Source: Macrostomum lignano (Eukaryota). Taken from it: a stretch of 64,000 nucleotides of DNA. The stretch covers positions 186,001-250,000 of the forward strand of contig NIVC01001135.1 of assembly GCA_002269645.1 (NCBI GenBank), in the 5' to 3' direction. Positions 968 through 38,058 of the stretch are shown one piece after another. The translations under genes and the position numbers were made by a program. The notes under the pieces are model-generated. The model had not been told where the DNA came from and did not search any database. It saw only the letters and a program-made list of their open reading frames with translations. How positions within the stretch are numbered: the first letter of the stretch is position 1; each line of letters opens with the position of its first letter.

Positions 968-2021
968 GTGCTTTTGGTTACTTGGATTGTTATCTTTCTC
1001 TGCAGCGCGTACCTGGACCACGGGAAGCTCGGCAGTGAGGCCCGCCACCTTCCCACGCTGCTGCTCAGGGCCGGTGATATCGAGCTCAACCCGGGACCTG
1101 CTCTCTGCGGGCAGCGTGAGTGCGGACGCCCGCTCAGAGGGAAGTCCCTCCACTGCCGCATCTGTGATAAGTACTACCACCTCCAACGCGACTGCTCCGG
1201 GCTGAGCAGATGGGCGGCTAACAAGGCCATCGGCTCCACCGAATGGCGCTGCACTAGCTGCACGAACCGAGGCAGCAACGCCGTCAATTCCACTTATTCT
1301 TTCGACTCGGACAGCCAGCCAGAGGTGGCCCCTACTGAAGTCGCCGAAGTTAGCCGGCGACAAGAACTGCTCCAACGCATCCAACGAGACAAGCCGAACT
1401 GCACCCACTGCCGCAAACCCATCCGAATCAGCACTGTTATTGCGTGCCGTAACACCTGCGAAGGTCTCTTCCATAATGCTTGCACCCAGGCCACCCGGGA
1501 TCAGATTAAACGCGAAGTCAGCAGGGGAATGTGGCGCTGCCCTCCTTGCTCGAAAGCAGCCAGCCGTAGTCCACCCTCCCCCACGGGCTCGGACCCGACC
1601 ATCCCTAGGCGCGGCAGCTCAGCTCCCGGTTGGGACAGCTCGAAACCGACCTTAACCATTCTGCAATGGAACGCCGACGGGATCTGCAACAAGATGGGGG
1701 AGCTGGAGGAACTAGCTCAGAGACTTCAGGTCGATATTATCACCGTCCAGGAGTCCAAGCTCACGTCGCTCAATCGAACCCCTAAGCTGTCAGGCTATTC
1801 CACCGTTCGCAAGGATCGCAAAGTAGCTAGGCTCGACCCCAGCATCAAAGGAGGAGGCCTGTTGCTCTTCGTCCGCCAAGGCATTCCGTATCGTAAAATC
1901 CAGGGCTGGAACGGCGGCACCACTGAAGGGAGCCGTATCGTCGTGAACACGTCCGCCCGCGACAGACTTATCATCACCAATATTTATCGCCCCCCGATCC
2001 GACGTATCGAAGGCGAGGACC
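968..2021 (+). CDS. LINE ORF, N-terminal part: 2A-like peptide, tandem PHD fingers, first half of APE endonuclease
   Basis: ORF track 968..2227; after 2021 the frame runs into the nested insertion. No in-frame ATG before the second PHD finger. Confidence 0.85.
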
Positions 2022-3104
2022 TTGACTTACTTCTTGACTTAGCTGCAGGGCTGTCCCGGAGGGGACACAGCGGGAAGGCGCGGGCGCCCATTCCGCTAGT
2101 CCCTGAACGGCCGACGCGTCGCTATGGACGGAGGGTTGGCGCCGCCCAGGGAGGTCCCCCAGTGTCGCCAGCAGCTATGGTGCTCTCTGGAAAGGAGAGT
2201 TCAGCCCTGCGGGTGGCCCGAAGGTAGCGCATGAGCTGATTAAAGTTTTCGGGTTTGCACGCTTCAGTAATCTATAATTTGCACGGCCCGAGGTAAGTGA
2301 GTCTGGCCCGCGTGAAGGCGGGACAGATGCTGACGAAATGCTCAGCGGTTTCGTCACCTGAGTTGCAGAAACTACAGGTGGCGTTGGTGGCGTTGCCCTG
2401 CAGGTACTGGTGCCTGGAGAAGCAGCCGTGACCAGAGAGGGTCATGGTGGCAGCCCGGATGTCTCTGCGCGAGAGGCGCAAGAGGAGCTTCCGGAGCTGG
2501 TGAGAGGGCTGAGGGACAGCGCCTCTGGATTGCCTGCAGTTCGTGCGGTTCGCCCAAGTCGAGCGGTGCTGAGTCCTGATCCACGCTTTGATGCGCGAGT
2601 CGATGACACAGCCAGGAATCGGGACAAGAGGTTCGGGGCCGAGAGAGGAGCCGGAGGCACCAACTTTTGCAAGGGTGTCAGCCAACTCATTTCCTCGGAT
2701 CCCCACATGCCCCGGAACCCACTTAAGGGTAATTTTGTTGGCGGAACCCAACACGTTGAGGAGTTTATTGATACAGTCGAGGACTGTAGCAGAGTTGGTG
2801 CTGCAGCCACTGATGGCGTGCAAGGCAGCTTGGCTGTCCGAATGGAAAATGATGTTCTTACCAGTAACGCCAGTGGCGAGAAGCTCTGCAGTGCAGGAGC
2901 TGATGGCCAGAACTTCATTTTGGAAAACACTGGAGTTGACCCCAGTGTATTGAGCGTGGGTAGCGATGACCCTCCCGTTCAGAAAGATTCCAACACCAAA
3001 GCCGGTGTTGGCTGACTGCTTAGAACCGTCGGTGTAGCAATGAAGCTCACCAGGGTTCCATTGGTCATTGATGTTATCGCGCGAGTCGATAGCTACGGAG
3101 TAGC
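2022..3104 (-). mobile_element. 5'-truncated RNase H-bearing non-LTR retrotransposon (LOA/Tad/I-group-like) inserted antisense in the APE domain
   Basis: Minus ORF has YTDGSK, NEVLAI, SDSQAA, WVPGHVGIRGNELAD and a C-terminal knuckle (SGHG...CSFC...EHFVSICP). 12-bp TSD AAGGCGAGGACC at 2010-2021 and 3105-3116; short AAGT/AAGTC-repeat tail. Confidence 0.92.
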
Positions 3105-3116
3105 AAGGCGAGGACC

Positions 3117-6100
3117 ACCGCGAACATCCTAGTGTCGACAGCTGGCTCCGCTGCCACCACCGCGAGATCATCACGGGCGACTTTAACCTGCACCACCCAT
3201 CCTGGGGGAGCGACGCCGATCAGGGCCGGGACAGCCTGCCTCAATCCCGTTGCCTTATCAACTGGTGTTCCTCTACCAACTACCGGATACTCAACTCCGG
3301 AGCTCACACCTGCATCGACCGTCACTCAGGGCGCTCCAGCGCTCCCGACCTCTCCATTGCCAGCCAGGAGATCGCCCCCCGCTGCACCTGGTCCACTCTC
3401 AATGAACTTGGATCGGATCACAAACCTATCCTGATCTCTATCAGCACTGCTCGGGACACTCTTCGAGTGACACCCAGATTGCACTGGGCTTGGAAGAAAG
3501 CCGACTGGTCTCAGTTCAGGTCCATTCTTGAGGAAAACTGTGAACACCTCAACCGAGGTTCCATCAAGAAACAGGTCAGCCGGCTTACCAAAGGTATGCT
3601 CAAAGCGGCAGAACTGGCCATCCCGCGAAAAAAGGTCTCCATCAGAAATAAACCGTACTGGGATGACGAGCTGAGCAAACTGCGTGATCATCGCAACGCT
3701 CTCCGTGAAGCCGCCGCCCCTCCCGAGGAATGGCGCGCTAAAAGCCAGGAGCTTATCAAGCGCTGCGGCGAAAAGAAACATGAATTTTGGAAGGACTTTA
3801 TCGGAAAAATGGCCGAATCCGAGGACCCCAAAAAGGTCTGGAACACCATCAAATGCCTTAGCAACGGCAAACAAGCGGCCCACCCTAACGAGAACCTGGT
3901 CGTAAATGGAAAGGAACTCTGTACCGACAAGGACAAAGCCAACGCCTTCGGCAGATATTATGAAGACATTAGCACTCTGAAGCACGACGCCACCCACCGC
4001 AAATTCAAGGAGCAAACGGCTACTCGCCTAGCCTCCTATGAGGCGGACGACGACAACTATCGCCGTGACTTCACCGAGGGTGAACTGCTCAGAGCTCTCG
4101 ACAGACTTGATCCCAGCAAGAAATGCGGCCCCGATGGCATTGAAGCAGCGTTCTTTCTGCACCTGCCCGACCGCTGGAGAGCCGCGTGGCTCAAGGTCTT
4201 CAACCGCTGCTGGCGCACTGGACACTGCCCTGGCCCCTGGAAGCAAGCTATCATCATTCCTCTGCTCAAGGATGGCAAGGACCCCAAGGATCGAAGCAGT
4301 TACAGACCAGTTAGCCTCACCTCCATCTGCTGCAAAATTCTCGAAAGACTCATTCTGGACCGCCTCTACTACTGGCTGGAGCGACATAGAAAGATTCAAC
4401 TATGGCAAGCCGGCTTCCAACGAGGCCGGGGCTGCGAAGAACAGGTCGCCCGCCTGGTCCAGGCCATTCAAGACGGTTGGGAGCGCAACCCGCATCTCAA
4501 AACCCTTGCCGTGTTCATAGACTGCTCCAGAGCGTTTGACAGAGTCTGGAGGGCCCGACTCCTCGCCCGGATGATGGACGAGGGCCTTCCCGCCTGTATG
4601 GTCAAATGGTTTGACAGTTTCCTTGAGGGCCGCCAAATTGCCGTTAGAATCGGCGCGACCACCGGAAAATGGCGCCGGCTCCGTGAGGGAGTCCCGCAAG
4701 GGGCTGTCAGCTCGCCGGCCCTCTTCCTTCTCTACGTTAATGCCTGGTCCGACTACATGACGGCGAATGTCGAATATAGCGGCTACGCGGACGACATCGC
4801 ACTCTGGACGACGGGCCGCGACATCCGAGAGCTTCTTGCTCGCACTCAAGATGCGCTCCAGAAGATCGGACAGTGGGCAGATCACCTGCGCATTGACCTT
4901 AATCCATCCAAGACCGAATGCTGCCTCTACAGCAGGGACCGCGCCGACCGCGACCGCGCTCTTCACCTCTCGCTGAACGGCCACTCGATCCCCTCCAAGA
5001 AAGAACTGAAGTTCCTCGGGGTGTGGATAGACCATAGCCTCCTTTTCGATAAGCACTCCAACGCGGTCAAAGAGAAGATGGCACGCAGAACCGCCATCAT
5101 CCGCGCGCTCGCCCATCGCGAATGGGGCTGGGACCGCGCCCTGCTCCTCCGGGTTTATCGAGCACTCGTCGAATCTGTGGTCTGGCACGCTGCTGCTGCC
5201 TGGACTCCATGGCTGTCCAGTACCCGCCTCGACGACCTGGACCGCGCTCAAAGAGAAGCCCTCAGAGCCATCACGGGATTGCCACGCTCGACACCGGTGG
5301 AAGCCATCTATATGGAAACCAACGTCAGTCCGATCAGCCTCGAAGCCCGCCGTAGGGCCCTGATGGCCTACGAGAAAGCAAACCGCCGCCCGGCCGACGA
5401 TCCGTTCCGGCAGATTTGCGACAGGCAACTCAACATCCGGCTAGCGGCCAACAAAGGGCTACGAGAGCAAGCCAGAGCCATCTGCAACGCTATGATCCCT
5501 CTCCCGCGTCTGCCTATACCTACGATCCGCAATCCCCCATGGGACTCGCTGGTTGATTGCGGGGTGCAGATGTACACCAAACTCCCCGAGCATGAAGGAT
5601 CTGCGACCGAGGCAGTGCTCTCCGCGATTGAGCAGCGTTGTCCCGACGCAGCCCTCTACTTCACTGACGGTTCAGCCTCAGGAGGCACCACCAACGGGGG
5701 ATCGGCCTGGATCCTCCTCCACAAAGAAGACGGCACCATCATCCGCAGAGGGCACGCGGCAGCTGGCCGATGGTGCAATTCCTACGAGGCCGAGCTTCAA
5801 GCCATTACTCTCGCGCTTCAGGACATCATTGATTCCGCTCCCGCCTGCGCCGCCATCCTCACGGACAGTCAAAGTGCCATTACCGCCATCCAAGCCGACC
5901 GGCCCACGCTGAACGTTAGGCTCGAGCTAGCGAAGACCCTCCTCGTGACCGCGGCCCATAGGACCAAACTTACGCTGCTCTGGGTGCCCGGGCACTCGGG
6001 AGTGCACGGCAATGAACTCGTCGACACAGAAGCGAAAGTCGCAGCGACTCTCTGTCAAGATCAGGTGCTTATCTCGCTCCCCGCCTCCAAGGAGCGGATC

Positions 6101-6436
6101 TACCATCACCTTAGGTATCAGCCCGACCTGCCAGGACACCTGGAGGTATACCGCACCCCGGTGTCCCCAGGAACGGGCTCTCGTCGGCAGAAGACGCTTA
6201 TATCCCAAGTCAGATCCGGCCATTGCCCAGAATCATCCTACTATCGTCACCGAACAGGCATCGCCGAAGGAGGGCCATGCCGGCTATGCAATCAACCGAC
6301 TGAGCAGTTCCATATTCTCCATTGTCCTAAGCTCGAACTTACTAGACGCACCATCGGCGTCACTAGCATTGGTGACCTTGCACGAGGAGAAGTAGTGGCG
6401 CAGCTCCTGGGGGCCATCGACTGGCGGCCCCTTTGA
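3117..6436 (+). CDS. LINE ORF, C-terminal part: rest of APE, reverse transcriptase, RNase H, zinc knuckle
   Basis: ORF track 3467..6436 extended upstream in frame through ITGDFNLHHPSWG and SDH. Confidence 0.93.
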
Positions 6437-10527: not shown

Positions 10528-11847
10528 TTAGCGCTTCCTGCGCATCCTCAGGAAGTTGTTCTTGCGCCAGAAGGCGTGCCGACTACCGCCGATGGTCTGG
10601 TGGAACCGGTGACCCTTGCCCAGTCCGCGGCTCTTCTTAGAAGAGCTGGTCAGGCCGCGCATCTCCCTGTGCTTGTGCTTGGCGGTGCAGATCCAGTTGA
10701 TGCGCGGGTCGCGCCTGATGGCCTTGTGGTTGGGATCCACCAGGATCACCTCGTAGAACTTGTAGGTGGAGTCCTGCGCGATCCAGTAGGAGCCCAGCAC
10801 GCGGAGGGCGCCGATCTTGCGGCCGATTCGCTCCTGATGTGTGGGAATTGGTTTGGGCATTGAATTGGCGCCACCCCCTGTTTTTCAGCCATAGAGTGGC
10901 GCCAACCCCAGTTCTTCAGCCATAGAGTGGCGCCAACCCCCCAGTTCTTCAGCCATAGAGTGGCGCCACCCCCCAGTTCTTCAGCCATAGAGTGGCGCCA
11001 ACCCCCCAGTTCTTCAGCCATAGAGTGGCGCCACCCCCAGTTCTTCAGCCATAGAGTGGCGCCACCCCCCCCCCAGTTCTTCAGCCATAGAGTGGCGCCC
11101 CCGCAGTTCTTCAGCCATAGAGTGGCGCCACCCCCTGTTTTTCAGCCATAGAGTGGCGCCACCCCCTGTTCTTCAGCCATAGAGTGGCGCCAACCCCAGT
11201 TCTTCAGCCATATAGTGGCGCCCCTGCAGTTCTTCAGCCATAGAGTGGCGCCACCCCCCAGTTCTTCAGCCATAGAGTGGCGCCAACCCCCCAGTTCTTC
11301 AGCCATAGAGTGGCGCCACCCCCCAGTTCTTCAGCCATAGAGTGGCGCCCCCCCCCCCCCAGTTCTTCAGCCATAGAGTGGCGCCCCCGCAGTTCTTCAG
11401 CCATAGAGTGGCGCCACCCCCCAGTTCTTCAGCCAGAGTGGCGCCATCCCCCATAATTTTTTTCAGCCATAGAGTGGCGCCATCCCTCCTGTTCTTCAGC
11501 CATAGAGTGCCCTTTCCCCGGTCCCACGTGACCCTGACCTCGGCGATGGCCTGATGGCTGCGCTGGTTCTTTAACTGGTTGACACCCTCGTGCACCGGCT
11601 TGCCATAGGTGGCGCCCTTGGGCACCGGGCGCTTGCGACCGCCGCGGCGGATGCGGATCCGGTAGATGACGAAGCCCTGCTTGGCCTTGTAGCCAAGGCG
11701 GCGGGCCCTGTCCGGCCGGGTGGGCTTGGTGGCCCGGTGGATCACGTGCCTCTGGCGCAGGTGCCAGCAGCGCAGGCGCAAAATGAAGCGCATCACATCG
11801 GATTGCTTTTTGCGGTACAGCTCCGAGATGAACTTGTAGGCGCCCAT
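10528..11847 (-). CDS. RPL15: 60S ribosomal protein L15 (eL15), 204 aa; coding exons 11847-11539 and 10833-10528
   Basis: [17 protein letters not shown]...[16 protein letters not shown] joins [17 protein letters not shown]...[10 protein letters not shown] across a phase-0 GT-AG intron; 103+101 codons. Confidence 0.97.
10862..11508. repeat. Minisatellite, about 31-33-bp unit CCCCAGTTCTTCAGCCATAGAGTGGCGCCA, in the RPL15 intron
   Basis: About 20 tandem copies with a variable C run. Confidence 0.97.
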
Positions 11848-13086: not shown

Positions 13087-15113
13087 TCAAGAATCCGCCG
13101 CCGCAGCGCATGCCGATCCCGAGCAGCCGCGCCTGGCGCCGGCGCTACCGCAGCATTGGGCGCTATTACGCCCAGCATCAGTAAGCATTCGCTGCTGCTG
13201 TTGCTTAGCCGAACAAGCCGAGGATTTGCCAACAGCCAGCCGGGGATTGCCGGAGTTCAAGCCGTCCAGCAGCACGCAGGCTTTGCACACTGGCTGGCTG
13301 CTGACGTAGCCGCACAGCCGGCAGGTGTCCAGCTCCGGCATTCGAGCATCGGTTCGGAATCGAATCTGTTCAGCGGCCTGGATAATGTGCAGCAGAGCGG
13401 CCGGCCTGGCCCGCTCCAGATCCTTCACCAGAGCCCTGGCGTGGCCCCTGTAGGCAGCCGGGGCGTACAGGCACTCGGTGGCGAAGTAGTCAAGCCGTTT
13501 GAAATAGGCGTAGAGCACGATCTCCTTCTCGTAGGCGTACTTTAACGGCTTGCAGCGGGCCGGCAGGCCGCCGCCCGTGTGGGTGACGCCGTCGGCGCAG
13601 CGGGACAGCCTGGCCGCGTCGCCACGCAGGAGGTTCATCACGACGGTCTCGGCCACATCGTCAGCATTGTGACCGGTGGCCAGTTTGTCAGCTTTAAGAT
13701 GACCGGCGCCTCTGTCCAGGGCCTGGCGACGGAACACGCCGCAGAAGGTGCAATTGCTGCGCCGGCCAGCGGCCCGGACAACTTCGTCCATTGTCCAGCC
13801 GTACAGGTCGCGATAGGTGAAGATTGTGAGGGGCAGGCCGAGGCTGACCTGTACAATTTGATGGAAAAAGCCTGTTATACTACTTGATAATAAACAGCGT
13901 AAGTAGCTTTCTAATTTTATTTAACTTTTGATTCAATCCATAAGCTAAATTGTGAAGTTGATACCTGGACTTTAAAAGGTATTACCTGGGTTTCACAGGT
14001 GATACCTGGGTTGGACAGGTGATACCTGGGTTTCACAGGTGATACCTGGGTTTCACAGGCGATACCTGGGTTTCACAGGTGACACCTGGATTTCAAAAGT
14101 GACATCTGGATTTCAAATGTGATACCTGGATTTCAAAAGTGACACCTGGATTTCAAATGTGACACCTGGATTTCAAAAGTGACACCTGGATTTCAAAAGT
14201 GACACCTGGATTTCAAACGTGACACCTGGATTTCAAAGGTGACACCTGGATTTGAAATATGACACCTGGATTTCAAATGTGATACCTGGATTTCAAAGGT
14301 GACACCTGGATTTCAAAAGTGATACCTGGATTTCAAAAGTGACACCTGGATTTCAAAGGTGACACATTGATTTCAAAGGTGATACCTGGATTTCAAAGGT
14401 GACACATTGAGTTCAAAGGTGATACCTGGATTTCAAATGTGACACATTGATTTCAAAGGTGATACCTGGATTTCAAAGGTGACACCTGGATTTCAAAAGT
14501 GATTTCAAAAGTGATACCTGGATTTTAAAGGTGACACCTGGATTTCAAAGGTTACACCTGGATTTCAAAGGTGATACCTGGATTTCAAAGGTGATACCTG
14601 GATTTCAAAGGTGATACCTGGATTTCAAAAGTGACACCTGGATTTAAAAGTGACACCTGGATCTCAAAGGTGACACCTGGATTTCAAAGGTGACACCTGG
14701 ATTTCAAAGGTGACACCTGAATTTGATACAAAATGCTACACTGAGTTAAAACGATGACAAACCTCTGTGCGCCTCAGAGCGTCCAGAGAATCGTCCCGAT
14801 AACCGGCAATGCCCTCATCAATAGCCAGCAGGCGCAGATCCAGCCCATAATTGTGCCTCTCATTTAGCGTCTTCAATAGGTAGGCCAGCACAGTGGAATC
14901 TTTGCCGCCGGATGCGCCAATAGCGACGCGTTCGCCGGGCGAGAACATCCGGCTGGAGACGATCGTGTCGTGAGTTTCAGCTTCGAATGCCCAGAAGAAG
15001 CAGTCGCGGCAGACTGCGTGGCCGGTTTTTGGCCGACGAAGCTGCGGCTTCTTCTCGCAGAAACGGCACCTGCGCTGCGGCTGCCGCTGCGGTTCAGCCT
15101 GCGGTGAGGCGGC
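13087..15113 (-). CDS. CTU1: Cytoplasmic tRNA 2-thiolation protein 1; exons 15113-14763 and 13848-13087; start codon not found in the genome
   Basis: N-terminal CRFC...CRDC, PP-loop [26 protein letters not shown]-terminal [16 protein letters not shown]; phase-0 GT-AG intron. Confidence 0.95.
13960..14720. repeat. Minisatellite, 20-bp unit GTGACACCTGGATTTCAAAG, in the CTU1 intron
   Basis: About 37 tandem copies. Confidence 0.97.
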
Positions 15114-15134
15114 CTGCAGTTCCAGAATGAGATG

Positions 15135-16205
15135 GCATTGATGAGGCTGATGCTGGGGTGTGATTGATGAGGTTGATGCTGAGGCATGTGATTGATGAGG
15201 CTGATGCTGGGGAGTGATTGATGAGGCTGATGCTGGGGAGTGATTGATGAGGCTAATGCTGGGTGTAGAATAGATGAGGCTGGTGCGGGGGAGTGATTGA
15301 TGAGGCTGATGCTGGGTGTAGAATTGATGAGGCTGATGCTGGGGTGTGATTGATGAGGCTGGTGCTGGGGAGTGATTGATGAGACTGATGCTGGGTTGTG
15401 ATTGATGAGGCTGGTGCTGGGGTGTGATTGATGAGGCTGGTGCTGGGGTGTGATTGATGAGGCTGGTGCTGGGGTGTGATTGATGAGGCTGATGCTAAAG
15501 GTGTGGGATTGATGAGGCTGATGCTGGGGTTGGGATTGATGAGGCTGATGATGCAACATGTGATTGATGAGGCTGACGCTGGGGCATGTGAATGATGAGG
15601 CTGATGCTAAAGGTGTCGGATTGATGAGGCTGATGCTAAAGGTGTCGGATTGATGAGGCTGATGCTGGGGTGTGGGATTGATGAGGCTGGTGCTGGGGTG
15701 TGATTGATGAGGCTGGTGCTGGGGTGTGATTGATGAGGCTGGTGCTGGGGTGTGATTGATGAGGCTGATGCTGGGGTGTGGGATTGATGAGGCTTATGCT
15801 GGGGCATGTAATTGATGATGCTGGGTGTAGGATTGATGAGGCTGATGCTGGGGTGTGGGATTGAAGAGGCTGATGCTGGGGTGTGGGATTGGTGAGGCTG
15901 ATGCTGGGGTGTGGGATTGATAAGGCTGATGCTAAAGGTGTCGGATTGATGAGGCTGATGCTAAAGGTGTCGGATTGATGAGGCTGATGCTGGGGTGTGG
16001 GATTGATGAGGCTTATGCTGGGGCATGTAATTGATGATGCTGGGTGTAGGATTGATGAGGCTGATGCTGGGGTGTGGGATTGAAGAGGCTGATGCTGGGG
16101 TGTGGGATTGGTGAGGCTGATGCTGGGGTGTGGGATTGATAAGGCTGATGCTGGGGCATGTGATTGATGATCTGATGCTGGGATGGGATTGATGAGGCTG
16201 ATGCT
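15135..16205. repeat. Minisatellite, about 26-28-bp unit GATTGATGAGGCTGATGCTGGGGTGT, directly upstream of CTU1
   Basis: About 40 copies; explains the spurious His/Gln-rich ORFs. Confidence 0.96.
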
Positions 16206-16584
16206 TGATGTTTAAGGTGCTTTACTTTGCAAAGGATAACCGAAACAAAAAGTTAGTCTTAAAACTAATATGAAGAAGTCACAATATAATTTGGTTAGCT
16301 AGCAAAAATATGCATAATATACTCAAACAGCATTATAAAGATAACAAATGTGCTGCTAAAACCGGACACAATGAAATATGAAATGCTGCAACAGCTGAAA
16401 ATCTACACTGCGCCTTACTTGTAACTTTTTTAACACAAAGCAATAAGTTTGAATTTGCTGCAGAAAGATATAAGAACATTTAAAGGTGGAAAATATTGAA
16501 CCTCAGACTGCAGCAATGGTTGTATTGCAAAAAGTTACGCTCATAATTCACAGGCTTTAGCAAAAAAACAGACAAATTATACAC

Positions 16585-17070
16585 ATTGACCAATAGGAGC
16601 ACGGCATGGATTCCTCAGTTCTCTTGACCAATAGGAGCATGGCATGGATTCCCCAGTTCTCTTGACCAATAGGAGCACGGCATGGATTCCTCAGTTCTCT
16701 TGACCAATAGGAGCACGGCATGGATTCCCCAGTTCTCTTGACCAATAGGAGCACGGCATGGATTCCCCAGTTCTCTTGACCAATAGGAGCACGGCATGGA
16801 TTCCCAGTTCTCTTGACCAAAAGGAACACGGCATGGATTCCTCAGTTCTCTTGACCAATAGGAGCACGGCATGGATTCCCCAGTTCTCTTGACCAATAGG
16901 AGCACGGCATGGATTCCCCATTTCTCTTGACCAATAGGAGCACGGCATGGATTCCCCATTTCTCTTGACCAATAGGAGCACGGCATGGATTCCCCAGTTC
17001 TCCTGAACAATAGGAGCACGGCATGGATTCCCCAGTTCTCCTGAACCAATAGGAACATGGCATGGATTCC
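16585..17070. repeat. Minisatellite, 38-bp unit CCAATAGGAGCACGGCATGGATTCCCCAGTTCTCTTGA, between POLRMT and CTU1
   Basis: Period 38 at 16591/16629; about 12 copies. Confidence 0.97.
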
Positions 17071-17197
17071 CCTAACAATTGTGAACGTCAGAATGCGCTA
17101 TACGCTTGAAACGGAAAGACGTAGCGCTTCTCAGGCACACAATAACAAATCTAGAAGATAGTAAGTTATCTGTACAAAAAATATTGCCACAAGCATC

Positions 17198-20100
17198 TCA
17201 GGAGAAGAAATACTCGGACCGCAACACCTCGGACAGATCGAAGTCGCCCTTGTCGGGAATCTGCAGAATTCGAGAATTAAATCGCTTAGCAGCCTGCAGC
17301 TTCTGGCCGCTGAGGCTGGCCAATTCTGACTGACGAAATGAGAACACGCGATCAATATGCGAGCTGAGATCGGCTAGGATTGGCTTGCTGTGCAGCTGGA
17401 CAAACTGCTGCCTACAGATCCTGCCCATGGCGTCCACGTCGCACGGATGCGTCCAGAAGCAGTCGTGCACCGCGGCAAAAGTGACGCCAAACTTCTGGCA
17501 CTCCAATGCCGTTAGCATCATATGACACGAGTCGAGCGAGTGCACAAAATTAGGCGGAAACGCGTTGGACTGTTTGACCGGATCGGGCGGATACGGCTGC
17601 ACAATGGGCAGGCCTAGCGGAGTTCGCCATTGGATTGAAGCCTGCCTCAGCTTGGCCACGTCCTTGGCCAGATCGGTGAACCAGTGCTGAATGTGGGTGG
17701 CGCTAGTGAAAATCCTGCCAATGCTGGACAGGGTCAGTTTAGCCAAATAGGCTGCTGCCTTGTGCCGCATCTCGCTAGGGAACTCAGCGTCCTTCAGCCT
17801 GGCCAGGATCTGCTGTATGGCGCCGTACTCCGTGACGCCGTAGACTGTGGTCATCACCGACTGCTTGATTGTGCGCCTAACTACGTAGCCTTGAAGCGAC
17901 TGGGCAACCGCGTGACCTTGAGCGGCATCGGCTACTCTGGTAGACTCTACCAGATCTACAACAGCCTGGTAGACATCTTGCGGCCGGTCAACCGCTCGCA
18001 GATTGACAGCCAGAGCGCCGGCCACATCCCGGCCCATTGCGGCGTAGTGTTGCAGTCCGTTGCAGCTGCCGTCCTGGTGCACAGGGAACGAACTCACGTA
18101 GCGTTCCGGCCCGTCTGGATGCCTGGCAGCGGCGAGGATCTCAGAGCACGTGGCCAGAGTCTGCCAGGGAGCTTCGTCGTTCTGCCACCAGCCGCGCCCG
18201 GTCCAGGGCCGTTCGGCGCTGTCGATGATATCCGGCAGCAGCGAGTCGGCCATGTCTAGCCGTTCGGCGTTTGTCAATTTTTTGCCAAGATCCGCCACAT
18301 TGATGGCGTGAATGCGGAGCCAGCGCCAGCCGCGCTCGCCCAGAGGCTTGGCATTGTTGAAGCGAAGCAGCGAGCGGGACAGATCGCAGCTCATGTGGTT
18401 CAGATGGGGTGGCATTGGGTAGGCCCGGCCTCTGCAAAAGTTAATTTTACTTTTCGATACATATTGGCTTTTTGTGCAGTTTTGTATTTTTCGATACATA
18501 TCGGCTTTTTTGTGCAGTTTTGTATTTTTCGATACATATCGGCTTTTTTGTGCAGTTTTGTATTTTTCGATACATATCGGCTTTTTTGTGCAGTTTTGTA
18601 TTTTTCGATACATATCGGCTTTTTTGTGCAGTTTTGTATTTTTTGTTACATATCGGCTTTATTTCTCAGCCAGACGGTTCTCGAAAAATTCAAAGACAGA
18701 CAGAAAGACAGACAAACAAACAGCGCAAAATTAGCATATAGATTATACTACGCTCGTAATTATAATAGTTAATATATTATTACTAACCGACTACTCACCG
18801 AAAGTCCATATTATGCGGCAAGTAGAACGGCCGGTCCTTCAGCCAATCGGCAATGGACAGCCGGTAAAGCTCCGTGCACCAGAGAGAATAGCGCTCCCTT
18901 TCAGCTTTGCGCTCGGCCGCTTTCTCCCGGCGTAGGGCGGCAATGTCGGCCCTCGACGCGCCCGGAGCCGGAGGCGCTAGGCGCTCTACAGATCGGGGTC
19001 GGGCAGGCAGCGCCAGGTGCTCGGCGCCGCTAGAATTGAAGCGGTCAGTTATCAAGCGGAGCATGGCTCTGTCAACTCGCCAGGCGCAGGAGCTCACGGT
19101 CTGGTCGCGGTTGTTGGGGAGAATTCAATTGATAGGATTAGCGCGTGAAAAAAGAAACAGATAAAATGAAATATAGGACTGTTTGAGTGTGAATATGGGG
19201 ATGCTTAAGGAATCTGCAGCAGTATTTAGAAGTATGCATTCTGAGTCTGAGATGATGCTGATTTAAAGGATTCGGGGATAATGCAGATTTAAAGGATTAT
19301 GAGATGCAAATTTAGAGGATTCTGAGTCTGAGATGATGCAGAATTAGAGGATTTTAGGATGACGCCGGTTTAGAGAATTCTGATATGATGCAGATTTAGA
19401 GAAGATTCTGGGATGATGCAAGCAGATTTAAAGGATTCTGGGATGATGCAAGCAGATTTAAAGGATTCTGGGATGATGCAGATTTAAAGGATTCTGGGAT
19501 AATGCAGATTTAAAGGATTCTGGGATGATGCAGATTTAAAGGATTCTGGGATGATGCAGATTTATAGGATTCTGGGATAATGCAGATTTAAAGGATTCTG
19601 GGATAATGCAGATTTAAAGGATTCTGAGATGATGCAGATTTAAAGGATTCTGGGATGATGCAGATTTATAGGATTCTGGGATAATGCAGATTTAAAGGAT
19701 TCTGGGATGATGCAGATTTAAAGGATTCTGGGATAATGCAGATTTAAAGGATTCTGGGATGATGCAGATTTAAAGGATTCTGGGATGATGCAGATTTATA
19801 GGATTCTGGGATAATGCAGATTTAAAGGATTCTGGGATGATGCAGATTTATAGGATTCTGGGATAATGCAGATTTATAGGGTTCTGGGATGATGCAGATT
19901 TATAGGATTCTGGGAGGATGCAAATCTAGAAGATTATGGAAAGATGTAGAACTAGATGATTTTGAAGAATTAAAACCAATATATACTAAAACAGACGAAG
20001 CCAAGAAGCCACAGATATTCTAATTGGCTAAAGAAGAAATCAAGTGACATGGAAAGCAAGAAAATAAGCTAACTCATACTCACATGCAGTGCCTCAAGAA

Positions 20101-23100
20101 CAGTCGGGGGCGGCCCAGACAGTCGGATTTCGCTCATCTGGGCCAGGGCATATTGCCTCAGCAATTCCGTATTTAAGGTCATGTAGCGAGCTGGCCAAAA
20201 AGGCTTAGTCAGCATTGGCAGCTTGGATGGCTGGAACATCAGCTTGGTGGCATCCTGCGCCTGCTGAAATGCTTTAGCGACTGTCGGATGAGCCCGGATG
20301 TGCTGCACGTTGCTATCGGGATCCAGAACTCCGTACGTGGCCGGCACGCCTCGATAAGTGAGCTGGGCCAGGTGATCGGTCAGGTATTTGCCTAATTCGA
20401 TGCGCCAATGACGGGGCAGAGGCGGCCAGCCCAGGTCACCAGTTTCACGACCCAGCTCCTGGGGAATTATGGGAATTATTCGTATTGCAATTAATTGCTC
20501 GAAGCTTAGATGCCACCACTTTTAACATTTAGATGACAGCTGATTGAGGATTTCTTTGATGTAAGATCCCATCTACTGAGTGGATACTTACTGCGAATCT
20601 AAAATCCTATTTTTTAGGATCCCACTACTTAAGATCCGACGATATCCGACGATATAAGATACTATCAGCTTAGGATCAGACAGATCTAAGATCCCATCAG
20701 TTTAGGATCAAACAGATCTAAGATCCCATCAGTTTAGGATCAGACAGATCTAAGATCCCATCAGTTTAGGATCAAACAGATCTAAGATCCCATCAGTTTA
20801 GGATCAGACAGATCTAAGATTCCATCAGCTTAGGATCAGACAGATCTAAGATCCCATCAGTTTAGGATCAAACAGATCTAAGATCCCATCAGTTTAGGAT
20901 CCCACAGATCTAAGATCCCATCAGCTTAGGATCAAACAGATCTAAGATTCCATCAGCTTACGATCAGACAGATCTAAGATCCCATCAGCTTAGGATCCCA
21001 CAGATCTAAGATCCCATCAGCTTAGGATCAGACAGATCTAAGATCCCATCAGCTTAGGATCAGACAGATCTAAGATCCCATCAGCTTAGGATCAGACAGA
21101 TCTAAGATTCCATCAGCTTAGGATCCCACAGATCTAAGATCCCATCAGCTTAGGATCCCACAGATCTAAGATCCCATCAGCTTAGGATCAGACAGATCTA
21201 AGATTCCATCAGCTTAGGATCCCACAGATCTAAGATTCCATCAGCTTAGGATCCCACAGATCTAAGATCCCATCAGCTTAGGATCCCACAGATCTAAGAT
21301 CCCATCAGCTTAGGATCCCACAGATCTAAGATTCCATCAGCTTAGGATCCCACAGATCTAAGATCCCATCAGCTTAGGATCCCACAGATCTAAGATCCCA
21401 TCAGCTTTCCCATCAGCTTAGGATCCCACAGATCAAAGATCCCATCAGCTTAGGATCCCACAGATCTAAGATCCCATCAGCTTAGGATCCCACAGATCTA
21501 AGATCCCATCAGCTTAGGATCCCACAGATCTAAGATCCCATCAGCTTAGGATCCCACAGATCTAAGATCCCATCAGCTTAGGATCCCACAGATCTAAGAT
21601 CCCATCAGCTTAGGATCCCACAGATCTAAGATCCCATCAGCTTAGGATCCCACAGATCAAAGATCCCATCAGCTTAGGATCTCACAGATTTAAGATCCCA
21701 TCAGCTTAAGACCCGCTACTAGAGGACCCAGCCATGGAAAATCCCATTGCAAAGAAGTGTAATCAAAGCAGCACTGACCGCTCTAGCTTTGCGCTGAATT
21801 TTTTCATAGAACAAATCCGTCAGATCCCGCATAAAGTGAGGCTTTGGCATGTACTGCACAGCCTGTATAGAGGCCAGCATCACAGCCTGGCTGAGCAGAA
21901 ACTGTACAGTCTCCTCTTCATCAAGCGCAATCACCAGCGGATAGATGGTCCGCCTAGCGGTTCTCTCGTCTCTGACTTTCAACTGACGCCGACGCTCCGG
22001 CACCAGGCGGCGCAGCTCGCGCAGCCAGTGGTCGCGCACCGCGGCGGCCTCTTTGGCTGCCTGACGCCGAGCCGCAGGCGTCACGGCCGGCAGAGGCTCT
22101 GAGACGCAAACGATGGACACAGCGGGTTCGGACTGCTCCAGCTGTGAGGTAGGAATGATTTATTTCAATATATAAGGGGTTGCAGCCTAGTGGTTAAAGC
22201 GTCGGACTCGCGACTGAAAGGTCGGGGGTTTGATTCTAGACTCACTTAGAACAATTGTGTCCATGAGCAAAAGACACTCTGCATTGCTTCAGTTCACCCA
22301 GCTGTAAAATGGGTGCCAGCATTAGTTGGGGTAATTGACGGTGTGTGTGGCGACCCTCCCCCAGTCCTGAGCTGTCGGTTGCTTATCTGCCTATCAGGGC
22401 AGGTGTAATCAATTAATTTTATAGTATCGGAATAATAAACCAATCAGACTACTTTGCAGTTAGTGTTAATCAGTAGTGCTGGAGACATTTTCTCATTTAT
22501 TCTGATTAATATGACAGCTAACAAAAGTCATGTTAACCTGCTCAGAAACTGGTCCTGGCCGGTAACACTTGCAGAGGCCCACAGCCTACAGAAAGAACTT
22601 ACAGACAACTGAAGCGCTCGGTCCCCAGCGCTGTTGTCCTCGGAGCAACAGACTCCGATTGCTGCTTTGTCGATAAAAGCGAAGGAAGCCCAGCCAAGCG
22701 CAGACCAGCCATCAGCTCAGCATCCTGAGCTTCATCCGATAATTGATTTTGCCAATTGGAATCGGCCGCCAATCTTACTGTTAATTCGGCAACCTCGGCG
22801 CTGTTTAATCTGCCGGCTGCGCGTAGGCCGAGCGCCACCGCGCCTGCGCTCAACTGCTGACCATCGCGAGCGGCGCCGGCCAAGGTGGACAGGCTGGCCG
22901 AGAGGGTGGGCCGGTGCAGCAGGATGGCGGCCGGGATCTGCGAGGGTAAAGTGCGGTAGACCGGCATGTAAGAGCAGTCCTGGGGACGCTTCTGAGTGGC
23001 GGTTGACTCTAAACGTGTAGGGTCTGGAGACAAGATTCTCAATGGTAGTCTAGGGGCGATTCTCAATGGTTGTCTAGGGGCGATTCTCAATGGTAGTCTA

Positions 23101-25451
23101 GGGGCGATTCTCAATGGTAGTCTAGGGGCGATTCTCAAGGGTAGTCTATGGGCTATTCTCAATGGTAGTCTAGGGCGAGTCTCGATGGTAGTCTTTGGGC
23201 GATTCTCAAGGGTAGTCTATGGGCTATTCTCAATGGTAGTCTAGGGCGAGTCTCGATGGTAGTCTTTGGGCGATTCTCAAGGGTAGTCTATGGGCTATTC
23301 TCAATGGTAGTCTAGGGGCGATTCTCAATGGTAGTCTAGGGCGAGTCTCGATGGTAGTTTTTGGGCGATTCTCAAGGGTAGTCTAGGGCGAGTCTCGATG
23401 GTAGTCTTTGGGCGATTCTCAAGGGTAGTCTAGGGGCGATTCTCAATGGTGGTCAAGGGCGATTCTCAGTGTTAGTCTAGGGGCGATTCTCAATGGTGGT
23501 CTAGGGGCGATTCTCAATTGTAACCTAGGGGCGATTCTCAAAGGTAGTCTAGGGACGATTTGAAGGGTAGTTCAGTGCTTTTAGCGCCCTAGAAACGTCG
23601 GTTTCTAGACCAGCACAGGAACTAGCAGATCATTCAATAATTTTTACCTGTTCGTCCAGCACAACCGCCCCGGACCACAGGCTGGCCAAGCTGCCAAACC
23701 TGGCCCGTTGCTCAGCCAAATAAGCCGCCGCTTTGTCATGCTCGCCTCGCAGACACAGGCACAGCAGCCAGGCCGCCAGCTCTTCATTATATCTATCGGA
23801 TTTTTGAATAAAGGCCAGGCCAATATTGGGCGCGAACTGGGCCGGGTCCGGCCGCTGACGGGGCGGTGGCACCCGAGCTTGGAGCAGCTCGACGGCCCGT
23901 CGACAACGCCGGCGTAGATTGGCATCGAGCCAGAGCAGCTCGGACATCTGGCTGAGCTGCTGGACGAGTACAACGGCCAGAGTGCAAGGACAGCGCACAT
24001 TTTCTAGCCGCTGGGCCCAGTCAAAAACTGCCGCAATCTCCTTGGCTGACGCTTTTGCTTTCGCTTGGCTAGCAACGGGCGGCGATTTCGACTGCCCGCT
24101 CTGACGATGATCGTCGCCTGCTTCGCCTGTCGAGCGTCGACGCCTGGCAACAGAGGCGGCGGGCGCAAGCGCCGCTGTGCTCCGCTGTTGCCGGGCCGCA
24201 AAGCCTGCGAGATTAGTGAATTGGTGGTTTTGTAAGAAATATTCATTATTAAAACAACAAAAATGGCTCTATCTTACTGTTAGTAGACCAAAGGGATATT
24301 AAATGACAGTAAATTAAAAAACATTGACATAGACATAGACAGTAATTCTAAGCATTGTGTACGGGTTTTATGCTGTGCAGACAGGATTTTCTGTTGGTCT
24401 AGAGGCGATTCTTAAGGATAGTCTAAGGGTGATTATCAAGGATAGTATAGCGGCGATTCTCGAGGATAATCTAGGGGCGATTCTCAAGGATAGTCTAAGG
24501 GCGATTCTCAAGGATAGTCTAACGGTGATTCTCAAGGATAATCTAGGGGCGATTCTCAAGGATAGTCTATGGGTGATTCTCAAGGATAGTCTAAGGGTGA
24601 TTCTCAAGGATAGTCTAAGGGCGATTCTCAAGGATAGTCTAACGGTGATTCTCAAGGATAATCTAGGGGCGATTCTCAAGGATAGTCTATGGGTGATTCT
24701 CAAGGATAGTCTAAGGGTGATTCTCAAGGATAGTCTAAGGGCGATTCTCAACGATAATCTAACGGTGATTCTCAAGGATAATCTAGGGGCGATTCTCAAG
24801 GATAGTCTATGGCGATTCTCAAGGATAGTCTATGGGCGATTCTCAAGGATAGTCTATGGCGATTCTCAAGGATAGTATAAGAGTGATTCTCAAGAATAGT
24901 CTAACGGTGATTCTCAAGGATAGTCTAGGGGCGATTCTGAAAGTTAGTCTAGGGGCGATTCTGAAAGGTAGTCTAGGGGCGATTCTGAAAGTTAGTCTAG
25001 GGGCGATTCTGAAAGGTAGTCTAGGGGCGATTCTGAAAGGTAGTCTAGGGGCGATTCTGAAAGTTAGTCTAGGGGCGATTCTAAAAGGTAGTCTAGGGGC
25101 GATTCTGAAAGGTAGTCTAGGGGCGATTCTAAAAGGTAGTCTAGGGGCGATTCTGAAAGTTAGTCTAGGGGCGATTCTAAAAGGTAGTCTAGGGGCGATT
25201 CTGAAAGGTAGTCTAGGGGCGATTCTGAAAGGTAGTCTAGGGGCGATTCTGAAAGGTAGTCTAGGGGCGATTCTGAAAGGTAGTCTAGGGGCGATTCTGA
25301 AAGGTAGTCTAGGGGCGATTCTGAAAGGTAGTCTAGGGGCGATTCTGAAAGGTAGTCTAGGGGCGATTCCAAGCTACAAACAGCAAAACTTACAGTGCCG
25401 ACAAATCTGTTGTGTCTCTGATAAGGCAAAAATGCGAAGCAGCGGCAACAT
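17198..25451 (-). CDS. POLRMT: Mitochondrial (T7 phage-type) RNA polymerase; exons about 25451-25394, 24204-23648, 22979-22603, possibly 22585-22538, 22141-21779, 20458-20084, 19100-18799, 18431-17198
   Basis: HNMDFRGRAYP, QDGSCNGLQHYAA, KQSVMTTVYG, FPPNFVHSLDSCHM, VHDCFWTH, terminal YFFS; N-terminus MLPLLRIF...RHCFAARQQRST resembles a mitochondrial presequence. The phase of the junction at 22.5-22.6 kb could not be resolved. Confidence 0.93.
18449..18660. repeat. Minisatellite, 38-bp unit GATACATATCGGCTTTTTTGTGCAGTTTTGTATTTTTC, in the last POLRMT intron
   Basis: About 5.5 copies. Confidence 0.96.
19230..19930. repeat. Minisatellite, 26-bp unit GGATTCTGGGATGATGCAGATTTAAA, in a POLRMT intron
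   Basis: Period 26 at 19489/19515/19541. Confidence 0.96.
20665..21712. repeat. Minisatellite, 32-bp unit GATCCCACAGATCTAAGATCCCATCAGCTTAG, in a POLRMT intron
   Basis: Period 32; about 32 copies. Confidence 0.97.
22176..22410 (+). mobile_element. tRNA-derived SINE in a POLRMT intron (antisense to the gene)
   Basis: A-box-like TGCAGCCTAGTGGTTAAAGCG, B-box-like GGTTTGATTCT, then a CORE-type central segment TGTGTCCATGAGCAAAAGACAC...CACCCAGCTGTAAAATGGGT. Confidence 0.75.
23035..23570. repeat. Minisatellite, 21-bp unit GGGCGATTCTCAATGGTAGTC(TA), in POLRMT intron 2
   Basis: Same family as 24405-25368. Confidence 0.95.
24405..25368. repeat. Minisatellite, 21-bp unit GGGCGATTCTCAAGGATAGTC / GGGCGATTCTGAAAGGTAGTC, in POLRMT intron 1
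   Basis: About 45 copies in two variant blocks; the 21-bp unit creates long spurious ORFs. Confidence 0.97.
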
Positions 25452-37233: not shown

Positions 37234-38058
37234 TTACTCAGATTTTGGGTCGTCTCCATCAACAACTTGGCGCCTCCGCTTGTCGTACAGCTCGTAGACA
37301 ACAACAATGACCAGAATGGCGACAATTTCGCAGCCAATCGCCACGAGCGGAGTCAGGAAGCTCAGCGGACTCTTCACCCGCAGGAACAGCCTGGCGGTGT
37401 TCTCTCCGTACCTGTTTTTGGACGCGCAGGTGATGTAACCCCTGTCGGCTTCGTAGCTGACAGAGCTCAGGTAGAGCGTATTGTTATTTGTCAAATTGAA
37501 CGCCGGGTCTACAGACTTCGTCCAGCGAATGTCGCCCATCGGGTTGCCTTCGACCAGGCACAGTATTGCCACGCTTTCTCCGGGCCACATCGCCACGTCG
37601 TACTCGTTCGCCCCGTCCACCTTCATCGTCAGGAGTGGCGCGGACAAGAATCGGCCAGTGGCGGAAGCCGTCTGGTTGACAATGCAGACAAAGTTAGTGA
37701 TGTCAGACTTGACCGGGTAGTTGATGTTGAGCACCGAGGTACCAGAGAGGCCATTGTCAGCCAGTTTTGTGTCAACGGTGATTCTGGCGTCAACGGTTGC
37801 GCTGGAGTTGGAGTTTTCCAAACGCCAGAAGAAACTACTCGGGCTCAGCACCCCAGAGCTGCTGGCCCTGCAGGTAATGGCCAGACGTTTCAGCTTGCCA
37901 AGGGTGTACCTCTCGCCTGTTGAACTGCCAGAGTCTTTAAGACTCACCGAAACGTCGTCTACAGTAACATTGATGTGCTGAGCGGACACCACAGCAGCCA
38001 GCAGGAGCTGCAGGACAGCGGCAGCAATCGGGCTCTGGCAGGCGAACATTATCGACAT
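37234..38058 (-). CDS. Basigin/neuroplastin/embigin-family Ig-domain type I membrane protein, 274 aa, single coding exon
   Basis: Signal peptide, two Ig-like domains (C-W-C patterns, DRGYITC), TM segment PLVAIGCEIVAILVIVVVYE with the family's intramembrane Glu, then KRRR. Confidence 0.85.
   Translation of the reverse strand: MSIMFACQSPIAAAVLQLLLAAVVSAQHINVTVDDVSVSLKDSGSSTGERYTLGKLKRLAITCRASSSGVLSPSSFFWRLENSNSSATVDARITVDTKLADNGLSGTSVLNINYPVKSDITNFVCIVNQTASATGRFLSAPLLTMKVDGANEYDVAMWPGESVAILCLVEGNPMGDIRWTKSVDPAFNLTNNNTLYLSSVSYEADRGYITCASKNRYGENTARLFLRVKSPLSFLTPLVAIGCEIVAILVIVVVYELYDKRRRQVVDGDDPKSE

What the first reader, a model, noticed from the sequence alone, without database searches (positions are those of the whole stretch)
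17560..17612. Mitochondrial RNA polymerase apparently missing the specificity loop
Seen: TPLGLPIVQPY-P-PDPVKQSNAFPPNFVHSLD is encoded contiguously, with no room for an intron. Known (from recall of human POLRMT, to be verified by alignment): about 27 residues separate QPY from PNTRKQKNGFPPNF and form the specificity-loop hairpin that contacts promoter DNA in T7-type polymerases and lines the RNA exit channel. Here about 26 are absent while catalytic motifs and terminal YFFS are intact. Inference: promoter recognition is fully delegated to accessory factors, or mtDNA transcription initiates in a non-standard way in this lineage.
Basis: partly seen in the sequence, partly recalled or inferred. 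Interest (0 to 1): 0.7.

Follow-up and report, generated by a model that had tools for sequence, protein, structure and literature searches.

The report
Flatworm mitochondrial RNA polymerase lacking specificity loop
The mitochondrial RNA polymerase gene of the free-living flatworm Macrostomum lignano (or a sibling species) is otherwise intact but has completely lost the 26-residue hairpin that related polymerases use to read promoters, the most extreme case of a loop-shortening trend that also occurs in nematodes, a wasp and an ostracod.

Summary
On the minus strand, 17623..17531 encodes TPLGLPIVQPY-PPDPVKQSNAF-PPNFVHSLD inside one uninterrupted 1,234-nt terminal exon. Compared with human POLRMT, the query lacks the equivalents of about R1083–R1108, which is the whole specificity loop (1085–1108). 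Catalytic motifs A, B and C and the YFFS end are intact. The query keeps 93% of the family's highly conserved columns, its four 3' exons splice cleanly, and the AlphaFold model is confident across the junction. A retrotransposon in the window is 98% identical to a Macrostomum lignano element, and the polymerase branches with flatworms.

Among about 270 homologs, the spacer between the two anchors has a median of 35 residues and a minimum of 16. The query has 11. It is therefore the extreme case, but not the only short one: Ampulex and Cyprideis have 16, an unnamed clade has 19–20, and chromadorean nematodes have 23. Parasitic flatworms instead have 56–67.

In human POLRMT, deleting only the loop tip abolishes promoter-driven transcription but not catalysis. 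I could not check reads, transcripts or paralogs. I rate it a new variant of a known kind, of moderate to high interest.

The parts
17198..18431 (-). Terminal exon of the mitochondrial RNA polymerase gene (411 codons plus stop). It encodes the palm and fingers polymerase domain, ends ...SEYFFS*, and contains the loop-less junction.
   Evidence: ORF; splice acceptor TTTTGCAG|A at 18432/18431; human POLRMT E=3e-125; PF00940 E=1.8e-138.
17579..17599 (-). Codons Q-P-Y-P-P-D-P. This is the site where the 26-residue specificity-loop hairpin of other single-subunit RNA polymerases is missing (Y|P junction at 17591|17590).
   Evidence: Codon map; split alignments; spacer of 11 against a median of 35; AF2 mean pLDDT of 82 for residues 621–630.
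17531..17623 (-). The full anchor-to-anchor peptide TPLGLPIVQPY-PPDPVKQSNAF-PPNFVHSLD. The conserved flanks are retained, and K (the human K1114 equivalent) and Q are kept.
18038..18079 (-). Motif A region HQDGSCNGLQHYAA (catalytic Asp, the T7 D537 equivalent).
   Evidence: invariant columns D467–H475.
17831..17878 (-). Motif B / O-helix RRTIKQSVMTTVYGVT (T7 K631/Y639 equivalents).
   Evidence: invariant columns R532, K536, M540, T541 and Y544.
17447..17470 (-). Motif C VHDCFWTH (T7 H811/D812 equivalents).
   Evidence: invariant columns H669, D670, W673 and T674.
18432..18798 (-). Last intron (367 nt, GT..AG, phase 2), carrying a 38-bp minisatellite at 18451..18660.
18799..19100 (-). Exon encoding ...SSCAWRVD...LPHNMDFR (the end of the N-terminal domain and the thumb helix).
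   Evidence: tblastn; profile E=5.5e-27; human alignment; splice sites.
19101..20083 (-). Intron (983 nt, GT..AG) with a 26-bp minisatellite at 19246..19950.
20084..20458 (-). Exon encoding the part of the N-terminal domain that aligns to the human intercalating-hairpin region (human ~600–700). A beta-hairpin is predicted at protein residues 162–177.
   Evidence: query 156–397 aligns to human 600–853.
20459..21778 (-). Intron (1,320 nt, GT..AG) filled with a 32-bp minisatellite at 20644..21708.
21779..22141 (-). Exon encoding N-terminal-domain helices (weak match to human residues ~411–486).
   Evidence: domain 1, 19 bits.
22604..24205 (-). Probable further 5' coding exons (open frames ~23000..22604 and ~24205..23650, separated by a 24-bp minisatellite at 23034..23571). 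The boundaries, reading phase and start codon are not resolved.
   Evidence: (the strong donor at 22602 has phase 2 and fits no acceptor of the next exon); no PDB or Pfam match.

Best explanation
This is the nuclear gene for the mitochondrial single-subunit (T7-type) RNA polymerase of Macrostomum lignano or a sibling species. An in-frame, lineage-specific deletion has removed the entire specificity-loop beta-hairpin, so that the strand ending in QPY is joined directly to the conserved PxPxKQxNAF-PPNF segment by a proline-rich turn (PPDP). Shown here: the deletion exists in the assembly, the rest of the enzyme looks constrained and foldable, and the loop region is unusually labile in animals, and in flatworms in both directions. 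Inferred: the enzyme is catalytically competent but cannot read promoter bases through a polymerase-borne hairpin. Start-site selection on the 14.2-kb mtDNA must then rest on the remaining elements (the intercalating hairpin, the G-helix, the retained basic residue at the loop base) and above all on TFB2M/TFAM-type factors, or else be relaxed. The RNA exit path, which this hairpin helps to line in T7-type elongation complexes (established knowledge, not tested here), would be more open.
For: The junction is contiguous inside one exon. Three independent methods split the alignment at the loop. Three canonical GT–AG introns give a clean 757-codon frame. All 41 invariant columns are kept, as are 121 of 130 columns that are >=90% conserved; most of the nine substitutions are conservative, with G->S361 and G->D394 the exceptions, and the family range is 83–100%. 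The AF2 model has pLDDT above 90 over most of the polymerase domain and 82 across the junction, and its best structural matches are human POLRMT, then yeast Rpo41, then T7 RNAP. Organism: the RT ORF is 98% identical to a M. lignano RT, the NJ tree places the protein as sister to the other flatworms, and it shares the motif P[ND]P[VI]KQ with tapeworm and fluke sequences. M. lignano mtDNA is fully transcribed, so a working mtRNAP is required (PMC5446695). The human tip deletion 1087–1099 keeps catalysis but loses promoter-driven initiation (PMC4402542). Loop residues read the -4/-3 bases together with the G-helix. Natural stumps of 5–12 residues occur in other animals, so severe truncation is compatible with life.
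Against: There is only one assembly and no independent reads, transcripts or congeners. No protein more than 55% identical exists in the searched collections. M. lignano carries extensive recent gene duplication (my own knowledge), so a paralog with a loop cannot be excluded. The 5' part of the gene model (start codon, targeting peptide, PPR region) is unresolved, with a phase mismatch. The N-terminal domain is modelled with low confidence. Nothing was tested about TFB2M, TFAM or TEFM orthologs or about promoters in this species. Conservation of the G-helix could not be assessed.
Confidence: 0.6

Rival explanations
1. This locus is one of several POLRMT paralogs in a partly duplicated genome. 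Another copy with a normal loop does promoter-directed initiation, and this one is redundant, specialised (for example primer synthesis or elongation only) or starting to decay.
For: M. lignano is known for recent large-scale duplication (my own knowledge). The query sits in the lower 15% of the family for retention of conserved columns. The 5' exon structure could not be closed. No annotated M. lignano POLRMT appeared in the protein collection, even though M. lignano proteins are present in it, so annotation of this gene is evidently incomplete.
Against: There are no stops or frameshifts in 757 codons, the splice sites are canonical, every invariant residue is kept and the substitutions are mostly conservative. 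Recent paralogs would be expected to be near-identical, including at the loop. No second copy lies in the 64-kb window.
Confidence: 0.15
2. It is an assembly or consensus artefact: the true genome has the loop, and 78 nt were lost during assembly or polishing.
For: The region is extremely repeat-rich, with minisatellites in every intron, and only one sequence source is available.
Against: The junction lies in unique, high-complexity coding sequence about 860 nt from the nearest minisatellite (the 38-bp array at 18451..18660). The loss is exactly in frame and removes precisely one structural element, hairpin base to hairpin base. The flanking residues match the flatworm-specific motif. Long-read errors typically give frameshifts rather than clean 26-codon deletions.
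Confidence: 0.07
3. The loop is dispensable for promoter use in many animals, so its loss here has no mechanistic consequence. It would be a neutral end point of relaxed constraint on a variable surface element.
For: The spacer ranges from 16 to 97 residues in homologs with very low sequence conservation. Stumps of 5–12 residues occur in a wasp, an ostracod and nematodes, and unrelated-looking inserts of 52–67 residues occur in other flatworms. In human initiation complexes part of the loop's contribution is backbone binding, and R502 of the G-helix carries much of the base recognition.
Against: The human tip deletion abolishes promoter-driven transcription, and point swaps in the loop change species specificity. 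The loop also functions in yeast and plant enzymes.
Confidence: 0.2

Closest known systems
Human POLRMT (PDB 3SPA, 4BOC, 6ERP, 9MN4 and others)
   Same: Same family and fold. The polymerase domain aligns at E=3e-125 and about 50–60% identity, and the TM-score normalised to the query is 0.63–0.69. The catalytic motifs, the intercalating-hairpin region, the thumb and the YFFS terminus are shared.
   Different: The human enzyme has the specificity loop 1085–1108, whose T1101/N1103 contact the -4/-3 template bases. The flatworm protein has nothing between the equivalents of Y1082 and K1109. The R1113 and K1116 equivalents are V and S, and K1114 is retained.
Engineered human POLRMT with the loop tip deleted (residues 1087–1099; Morozov et al. 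2015, PMC4402542)
   Same: The specificity hairpin is removed while the catalytic core is left intact.
   Different: It is a laboratory mutant lacking 13 residues, and it cannot carry out promoter-driven transcription. The flatworm loss is natural, larger (26 residues) and occurs in an animal whose mtDNA is fully transcribed.
T7 RNA polymerase
   Same: Homologous polymerase domain (E about 1e-40; Foldseek probability 1.0). The anchors QEY...PNFVHSQD are conserved.
   Different: The T7 loop (739–770; numbering from my own knowledge) makes the main base-specific promoter contacts at -7 to -11 and later contacts the nascent RNA. The flatworm enzyme has no counterpart.
Naturally short-loop mtRNAPs: Ampulex compressa (wasp), Cyprideis torosa (ostracod), the nematodes Haemonchus, Syphacia and Meloidogyne, and the chytrid Phlyctochytrium
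   Same: The same element is independently truncated, with spacers of 16, 16, 23 and 20 against a norm of 35.
   Different: They keep 5–12 residues beyond the conserved base, whereas the flatworm keeps none. Some rest on annotated gene models only. The Ampulex junction is also seen in an independent 1.1-kb Logan contig.
POLRMT of parasitic flatworms (Fasciola, Paragonimus, Hymenolepis) and the unnamed sequence P0297
   Same: These are the closest relatives by tree and by distance, and they share the P[ND]P[VI]KQ.NAF motif at the loop base.
   Different: The element is expanded to 52–67 residues of unrelated-looking sequence rather than deleted.

Membership tests
Single-subunit T7-type (Pol A family) mitochondrial RNA polymerase, POLRMT/Rpo41 | Pfam RNA_pol (PF00940) polymerase domain above the curated cut-off | tested here: met
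   462.6 bits against a cut-off of 22, E=1.8e-138, in two stretches broken at the loop.
Single-subunit T7-type (Pol A family) mitochondrial RNA polymerase, POLRMT/Rpo41 | Catalytic motifs A (DG.CNG.QH), B (R...K...MT..YG) and C (HD) | tested here: met
   All are present and fall in invariant alignment columns.
Single-subunit T7-type (Pol A family) mitochondrial RNA polymerase, POLRMT/Rpo41 | Conserved C-terminal end (YFFS in animals, FAFA in T7) | tested here: met
   The protein ends ...LRSEYFFS*, with the stop at 17200..17198.
Single-subunit T7-type (Pol A family) mitochondrial RNA polymerase, POLRMT/Rpo41 | Overall fold of solved mtRNAP and T7 RNAP structures | tested here: met
   The AF2 model has pTM 0.71. 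The top Foldseek hits are human POLRMT (E=2.5e-48), yeast Rpo41 and T7 RNAP, all with probability 1.0.
Single-subunit T7-type (Pol A family) mitochondrial RNA polymerase, POLRMT/Rpo41 | Specificity loop: a variable beta-hairpin of 26±3 residues between blocks G+H and I (Nayak et al. 2009, as cited in PMC5040748) | tested here: not met
   No residues remain beyond the conserved loop base. The spacer is 11 against a median of 35 and a minimum of 16 elsewhere. This is a recognised functional element rather than a criterion of homology, so the protein is filed as a variant member.
Single-subunit T7-type (Pol A family) mitochondrial RNA polymerase, POLRMT/Rpo41 | N-terminal domain with an intercalating hairpin | tested here: inconclusive
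   The sequence aligns to human 600–711, which includes the 605–624 hairpin, with a 3-residue gap. AF2 predicts strands 162–166 and 173–177, but pLDDT is only about 57–63. The Pfam RPOL_N match is below the cut-off.
Single-subunit T7-type (Pol A family) mitochondrial RNA polymerase, POLRMT/Rpo41 | PPR domain, N-terminal extension and mitochondrial targeting peptide | tested here: inconclusive
   Open frames exist upstream (22604..24205), but they have no Pfam or PDB match, the exon phase is unresolved and no start codon could be assigned.
Single-subunit T7-type (Pol A family) mitochondrial RNA polymerase, POLRMT/Rpo41 | Dependence on TFB2M/Mtf1-type and TFAM-type initiation factors | not testable with these tools

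The most novel reading that the evidence does not exclude
Macrostomum lignano transcribes its mitochondrial genome with a polymerase that has no promoter-reading hairpin at all. Start-site choice would then be entirely factor-borne or sequence-relaxed. Together with the 5–12-residue stumps in nematodes, a wasp and an ostracod, and the replaced inserts in parasitic flatworms, this would mean that the 'universally conserved' third promoter element of single-subunit RNA polymerases has been abandoned repeatedly in animals.
Probability: 0.5. Interest if true: 0.7.

Novelty: new variant of a known kind. Interest (0 to 1): 0.58.

Why it matters
The papers read here describe the specificity loop as a beta-hairpin conserved in single-subunit RNA polymerases. 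They report it as essential for promoter-driven initiation in human mitochondria and as a determinant of species-specific promoter use. A natural enzyme without it, in a laboratory model animal with a small, fully transcribed mtDNA and a single candidate control region, offers a direct way to ask how much promoter selection the accessory factors and the G-helix can carry alone. It would also allow a test of whether the RNA exit path tolerates the missing wall. The survey further suggests that loop length varies far more in animals than the often-quoted 26±3 residues. That bears on mito-nuclear co-evolution and on how far the human and yeast models generalise.

Tried and rejected
1. Organism identification with the neighbouring CTU1-like protein was uninformative: the hits were 60–68% identical across plants and animals. 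The retrotransposon ORF then gave the answer.
2. The Rfam gathering scan of the window found no matches.
3. I searched for close relatives or independent copies of the gene. Nothing was more than 55% identical in the 5.8-billion-protein collection, the 1.84-billion representative set or the metagenome contigs. An exact look-up of the 471-aa terminal ORF found nothing. I therefore could not test whether the deletion is shared within Macrostomorpha or supported by other assemblies.
4. I could not complete the 5' gene model. Homolog-guided tblastn and a homolog profile reached only the three exons upstream of the terminal one. Enumerating splice phases showed that the strong donor at 22602 fits no acceptor of the next exon. 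The upstream frames have no PDB or Pfam match.
5. I first thought that P0270, the most similar full-length hit with a 19-residue spacer, might be a flatworm relative showing stepwise loss. I rejected this because it clusters with the wasp Ampulex in the tree.
6. A first anchor regex was wrong by one position and was corrected.
7. No paper mentions both Macrostomum and POLRMT.
8. G-helix (human T498/R502) conservation could not be assessed, because that stretch did not align at the sequence level.

Full report
**What is at the coordinates.** The flagged interval lies on the minus strand inside an open frame (17198..18613) whose real exon begins at a canonical acceptor (TTTTGCAG|A, first exon base 18431) and ends in ...SEYFFS plus a stop. 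The peptide TPLGLPIVQPYPPDPVKQSNAFPPNFVHSLD is encoded without interruption at 17623..17531, with the Y|P junction at 17591|17590. The exon is 1,234 nt long and the junction sits in its middle, so no intron can hide a missing segment.

**Is the loop really missing?** Three independent comparisons break at the same point.
- phmmer against all PDB chains aligns human POLRMT (E about 3e-125) in two blocks. Human ...QPY ends the first block and PNTRKQKNGFPPNF starts the second.
- A profile built from 20 long homologs skips profile positions 497–524.
- Pfam PF00940 matches in two stretches.

I counted from the residue numbers given in the literature (T1101, H1102, N1103 in the loop; R1113, K1114, K1116 at its base). 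On that count the query lacks the equivalents of human R1083–R1108, 26 residues, which covers the whole specificity loop as defined in PMC11642874 (1085–1108). The query's PPDPVKQSNAF corresponds to human KPNTRKQKNGF. K1114 and Q1115 are kept, while R1113 and K1116 are V and S.

**Is it unusual?** I measured the number of residues between '...Q.Y' and '.PNF.HS.D' in three samples.

| Sample | n | Median | Minimum | Other counts |
|---|---|---|---|---|
| 120 best homologs | 120 | 35 | 19 | 4 at <=20; 9 at <=25; 7 at >=45 |
| Junction-targeted search of 1.84 billion cluster representatives (49-residue query, favours loop-less proteins) | 147 | 35 | 16 | 5 at <=20; 12 at <=25 |
| Metagenome loci read directly from DNA | 5 | – | 21 | range 21–35 |

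The query has 11 and is the shortest of about 270, but it is not isolated. The named short cases are as follows.

| Organism or group | Spacer (residues) |
|---|---|
| Ampulex compressa (wasp; also seen in an independent short Logan contig) | 16 |
| Cyprideis torosa (ostracod) | 16 |
| A plant RpoT3 gene model | 17 |
| Phlyctochytrium (chytrid) | 20 |
| An unnamed 'QYY' clade | 19–20 |
| Haemonchus, Syphacia, Meloidogyne (nematodes) | 23 |

After subtracting the 11 conserved base residues, these keep stumps of 5–12 residues, too short for the canonical hairpin. [quoted passage not shown] 2009, as cited in PMC5040748).

**Whose gene is it?** The CTU1-like neighbour did not help. A 989-aa non-LTR reverse-transcriptase ORF at 3467..6436 is 98% identical to a UniRef Macrostomum lignano reverse transcriptase. 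A neighbour-joining tree of the polymerase domain puts the query as sister to Hymenolepis, Fasciola, Paragonimus and an unnamed sequence, and those are also its nearest sequences by distance. The loop base shares the motif P[ND]P[VI]KQ.NAF with tapeworm and fluke sequences. The other flatworms carry 52–67 residues at this site, so the element has changed in both directions within the phylum.

**Is the gene functional-looking?**
- Four 3' exons (22141..21779, 20458..20084, 19100..18799, 18431..17198) join through GT–AG introns of 1,320, 983 and 367 nt into a 757-codon frame.
- All 41 invariant alignment columns are kept, and so are 121 of 130 columns that are at least 90% conserved. Most of the nine substitutions are conservative. 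This is the 15th percentile of the family, whose range is 83–100%.
- The N-terminal part aligns to human residues about 411–486 and 600–853, which includes the intercalating-hairpin region.
- AlphaFold2 with a 115-sequence alignment gives pTM 0.71, pLDDT above 90 over most of the polymerase domain and 82 for residues 621–630. There the chain goes from a beta-strand through QPYPPDP straight into the next helix.
- Foldseek returns human POLRMT, yeast Rpo41 and T7 RNAP in that order.
- The 5' end is not resolved. Open frames exist at about 23000..22604 and 24205..23650, but the strong donor at 22602 is in a phase that fits no acceptor of the next exon. These frames match nothing in Pfam or the PDB.

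**What it probably means.** In T7, yeast, plant and human enzymes this hairpin takes part in promoter recognition. [quoted passage not shown] M. lignano has a 14,193-bp mtDNA that is transcribed throughout, with one tandem-repeat non-coding region as the candidate control region (PMC5446695). My preferred reading (confidence about 0.6) has three parts.
- This is the working mtRNAP and it is catalytically normal.
- Promoter or start-site selection has moved to the remaining polymerase elements and mainly to TFB2M/TFAM-type factors, or has become relaxed.
- The RNA exit path is more open.

Only the first step, that the deletion exists and the enzyme looks constrained and foldable, is shown here. 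The rest is inference.

**Rivals.**
- A full-loop paralog elsewhere in a duplicated genome (0.15).
- An assembly artefact (0.07). This is unlikely for a clean 26-codon, element-exact loss in unique sequence.
- A neutral loss with no mechanistic consequence because the element is dispensable in many animals (0.2). The natural stumps support this; the human, yeast and plant experiments argue against it.

**Limits.** No reads, transcripts, congeners or paralogs could be examined. No protein more than 55% identical was found in any collection. No paper mentions Macrostomum together with POLRMT.

**Verdict.** This is a new variant of a known kind: the extreme end of a recurrent and apparently undescribed erosion of the specificity loop in animal mitochondrial RNA polymerases.

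Noticed in passing
window 18451..18660, 19246..19950, 20644..21708, 23034..23571, 24397..25373: Every intron, or presumed intron, of the polymerase gene is largely filled by its own minisatellite array (units of 38, 26, 32, 24 and 24 bp; 6–41 copies; 85–98% matches). Similar arrays flank the gene at 13955..17072.
   Followed up: partly
window 968..6436 (+) and 2272..3174 (-): A non-LTR retrotransposon with PHD, endonuclease (Exo_endo_phos) and reverse-transcriptase ORFs, 98% identical over part of its length to a Macrostomum lignano RT. This identified the organism. An RNase H ORF lies on the opposite strand inside it, which suggests a nested or rearranged second element.
   Followed up: partly
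window 11299..11847 (-) and 10866..11509: The first about 100 codons of this ORF are a ribosomal protein L15 exon. The rest of the ORF reads through a 31-bp minisatellite (the repeated ...GATLWLKN... peptide), so the listed 182-aa ORF is not the real protein end.
   Followed up: no
window 13087..13791 (-): A CTU1 (cytoplasmic tRNA 2-thiolation protein 1) exon. It is only 60–68% identical to any protein in the collection, plant or animal, so it gave no taxonomic signal.
   Followed up: yes
window 39543..42254 (+): A single-exon 903-aa ORF with DUF4062 followed by weak NACHT/STAND NTPase matches. This architecture is typical of innate-immunity-like or signalling NTPases.
   Followed up: partly
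window 37234..38166 (-), 50128..51111 (-), 61772..62824 (+): Three further ORFs: an Ig-domain membrane-protein-like ORF, a C-terminal RING-finger (zf-C3HC4_3) ORF, and a Tc1/mariner-type DDE_3 transposase with HTH domains.
   Followed up: partly
window 22598..22610 versus 22141: The strongest splice donor upstream (CT|GTAAGT at 22602, phase 2) cannot be joined in frame to any AG acceptor of the next confirmed exon. A micro-exon, a non-canonical site or a different 5' structure is needed.
   Followed up: partly
P0003, P0048, P0099, P0241–P0245, P0297 (homologs, not in the window): Parasitic flatworm and related mtRNAPs carry 52–67 residues at the loop position. The sequence looks partly helical (for example ...EEWVAALTRAARRIERQ...) rather than like the usual hairpin, so the element may have been replaced rather than merely lengthened in Neodermata.
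   Followed up: no
P0098, P0102, P0103, P0115 (homologs, not in the window): An unnamed clade from ENA, JGI and Logan samples has QYY in place of QPY, NGC in place of NAF, and only about 8 loop residues. It branches near the base of the animal sequences in the NJ tree, and its organism is unknown.
   Followed up: partly
whole window: No Rfam family reaches its gathering score anywhere in the 64 kb. GC content alternates sharply between about 55–60% in genic or transposon blocks and about 30–35% in long intergenic stretches (26–36 kb and 44–48 kb).
   Followed up: no
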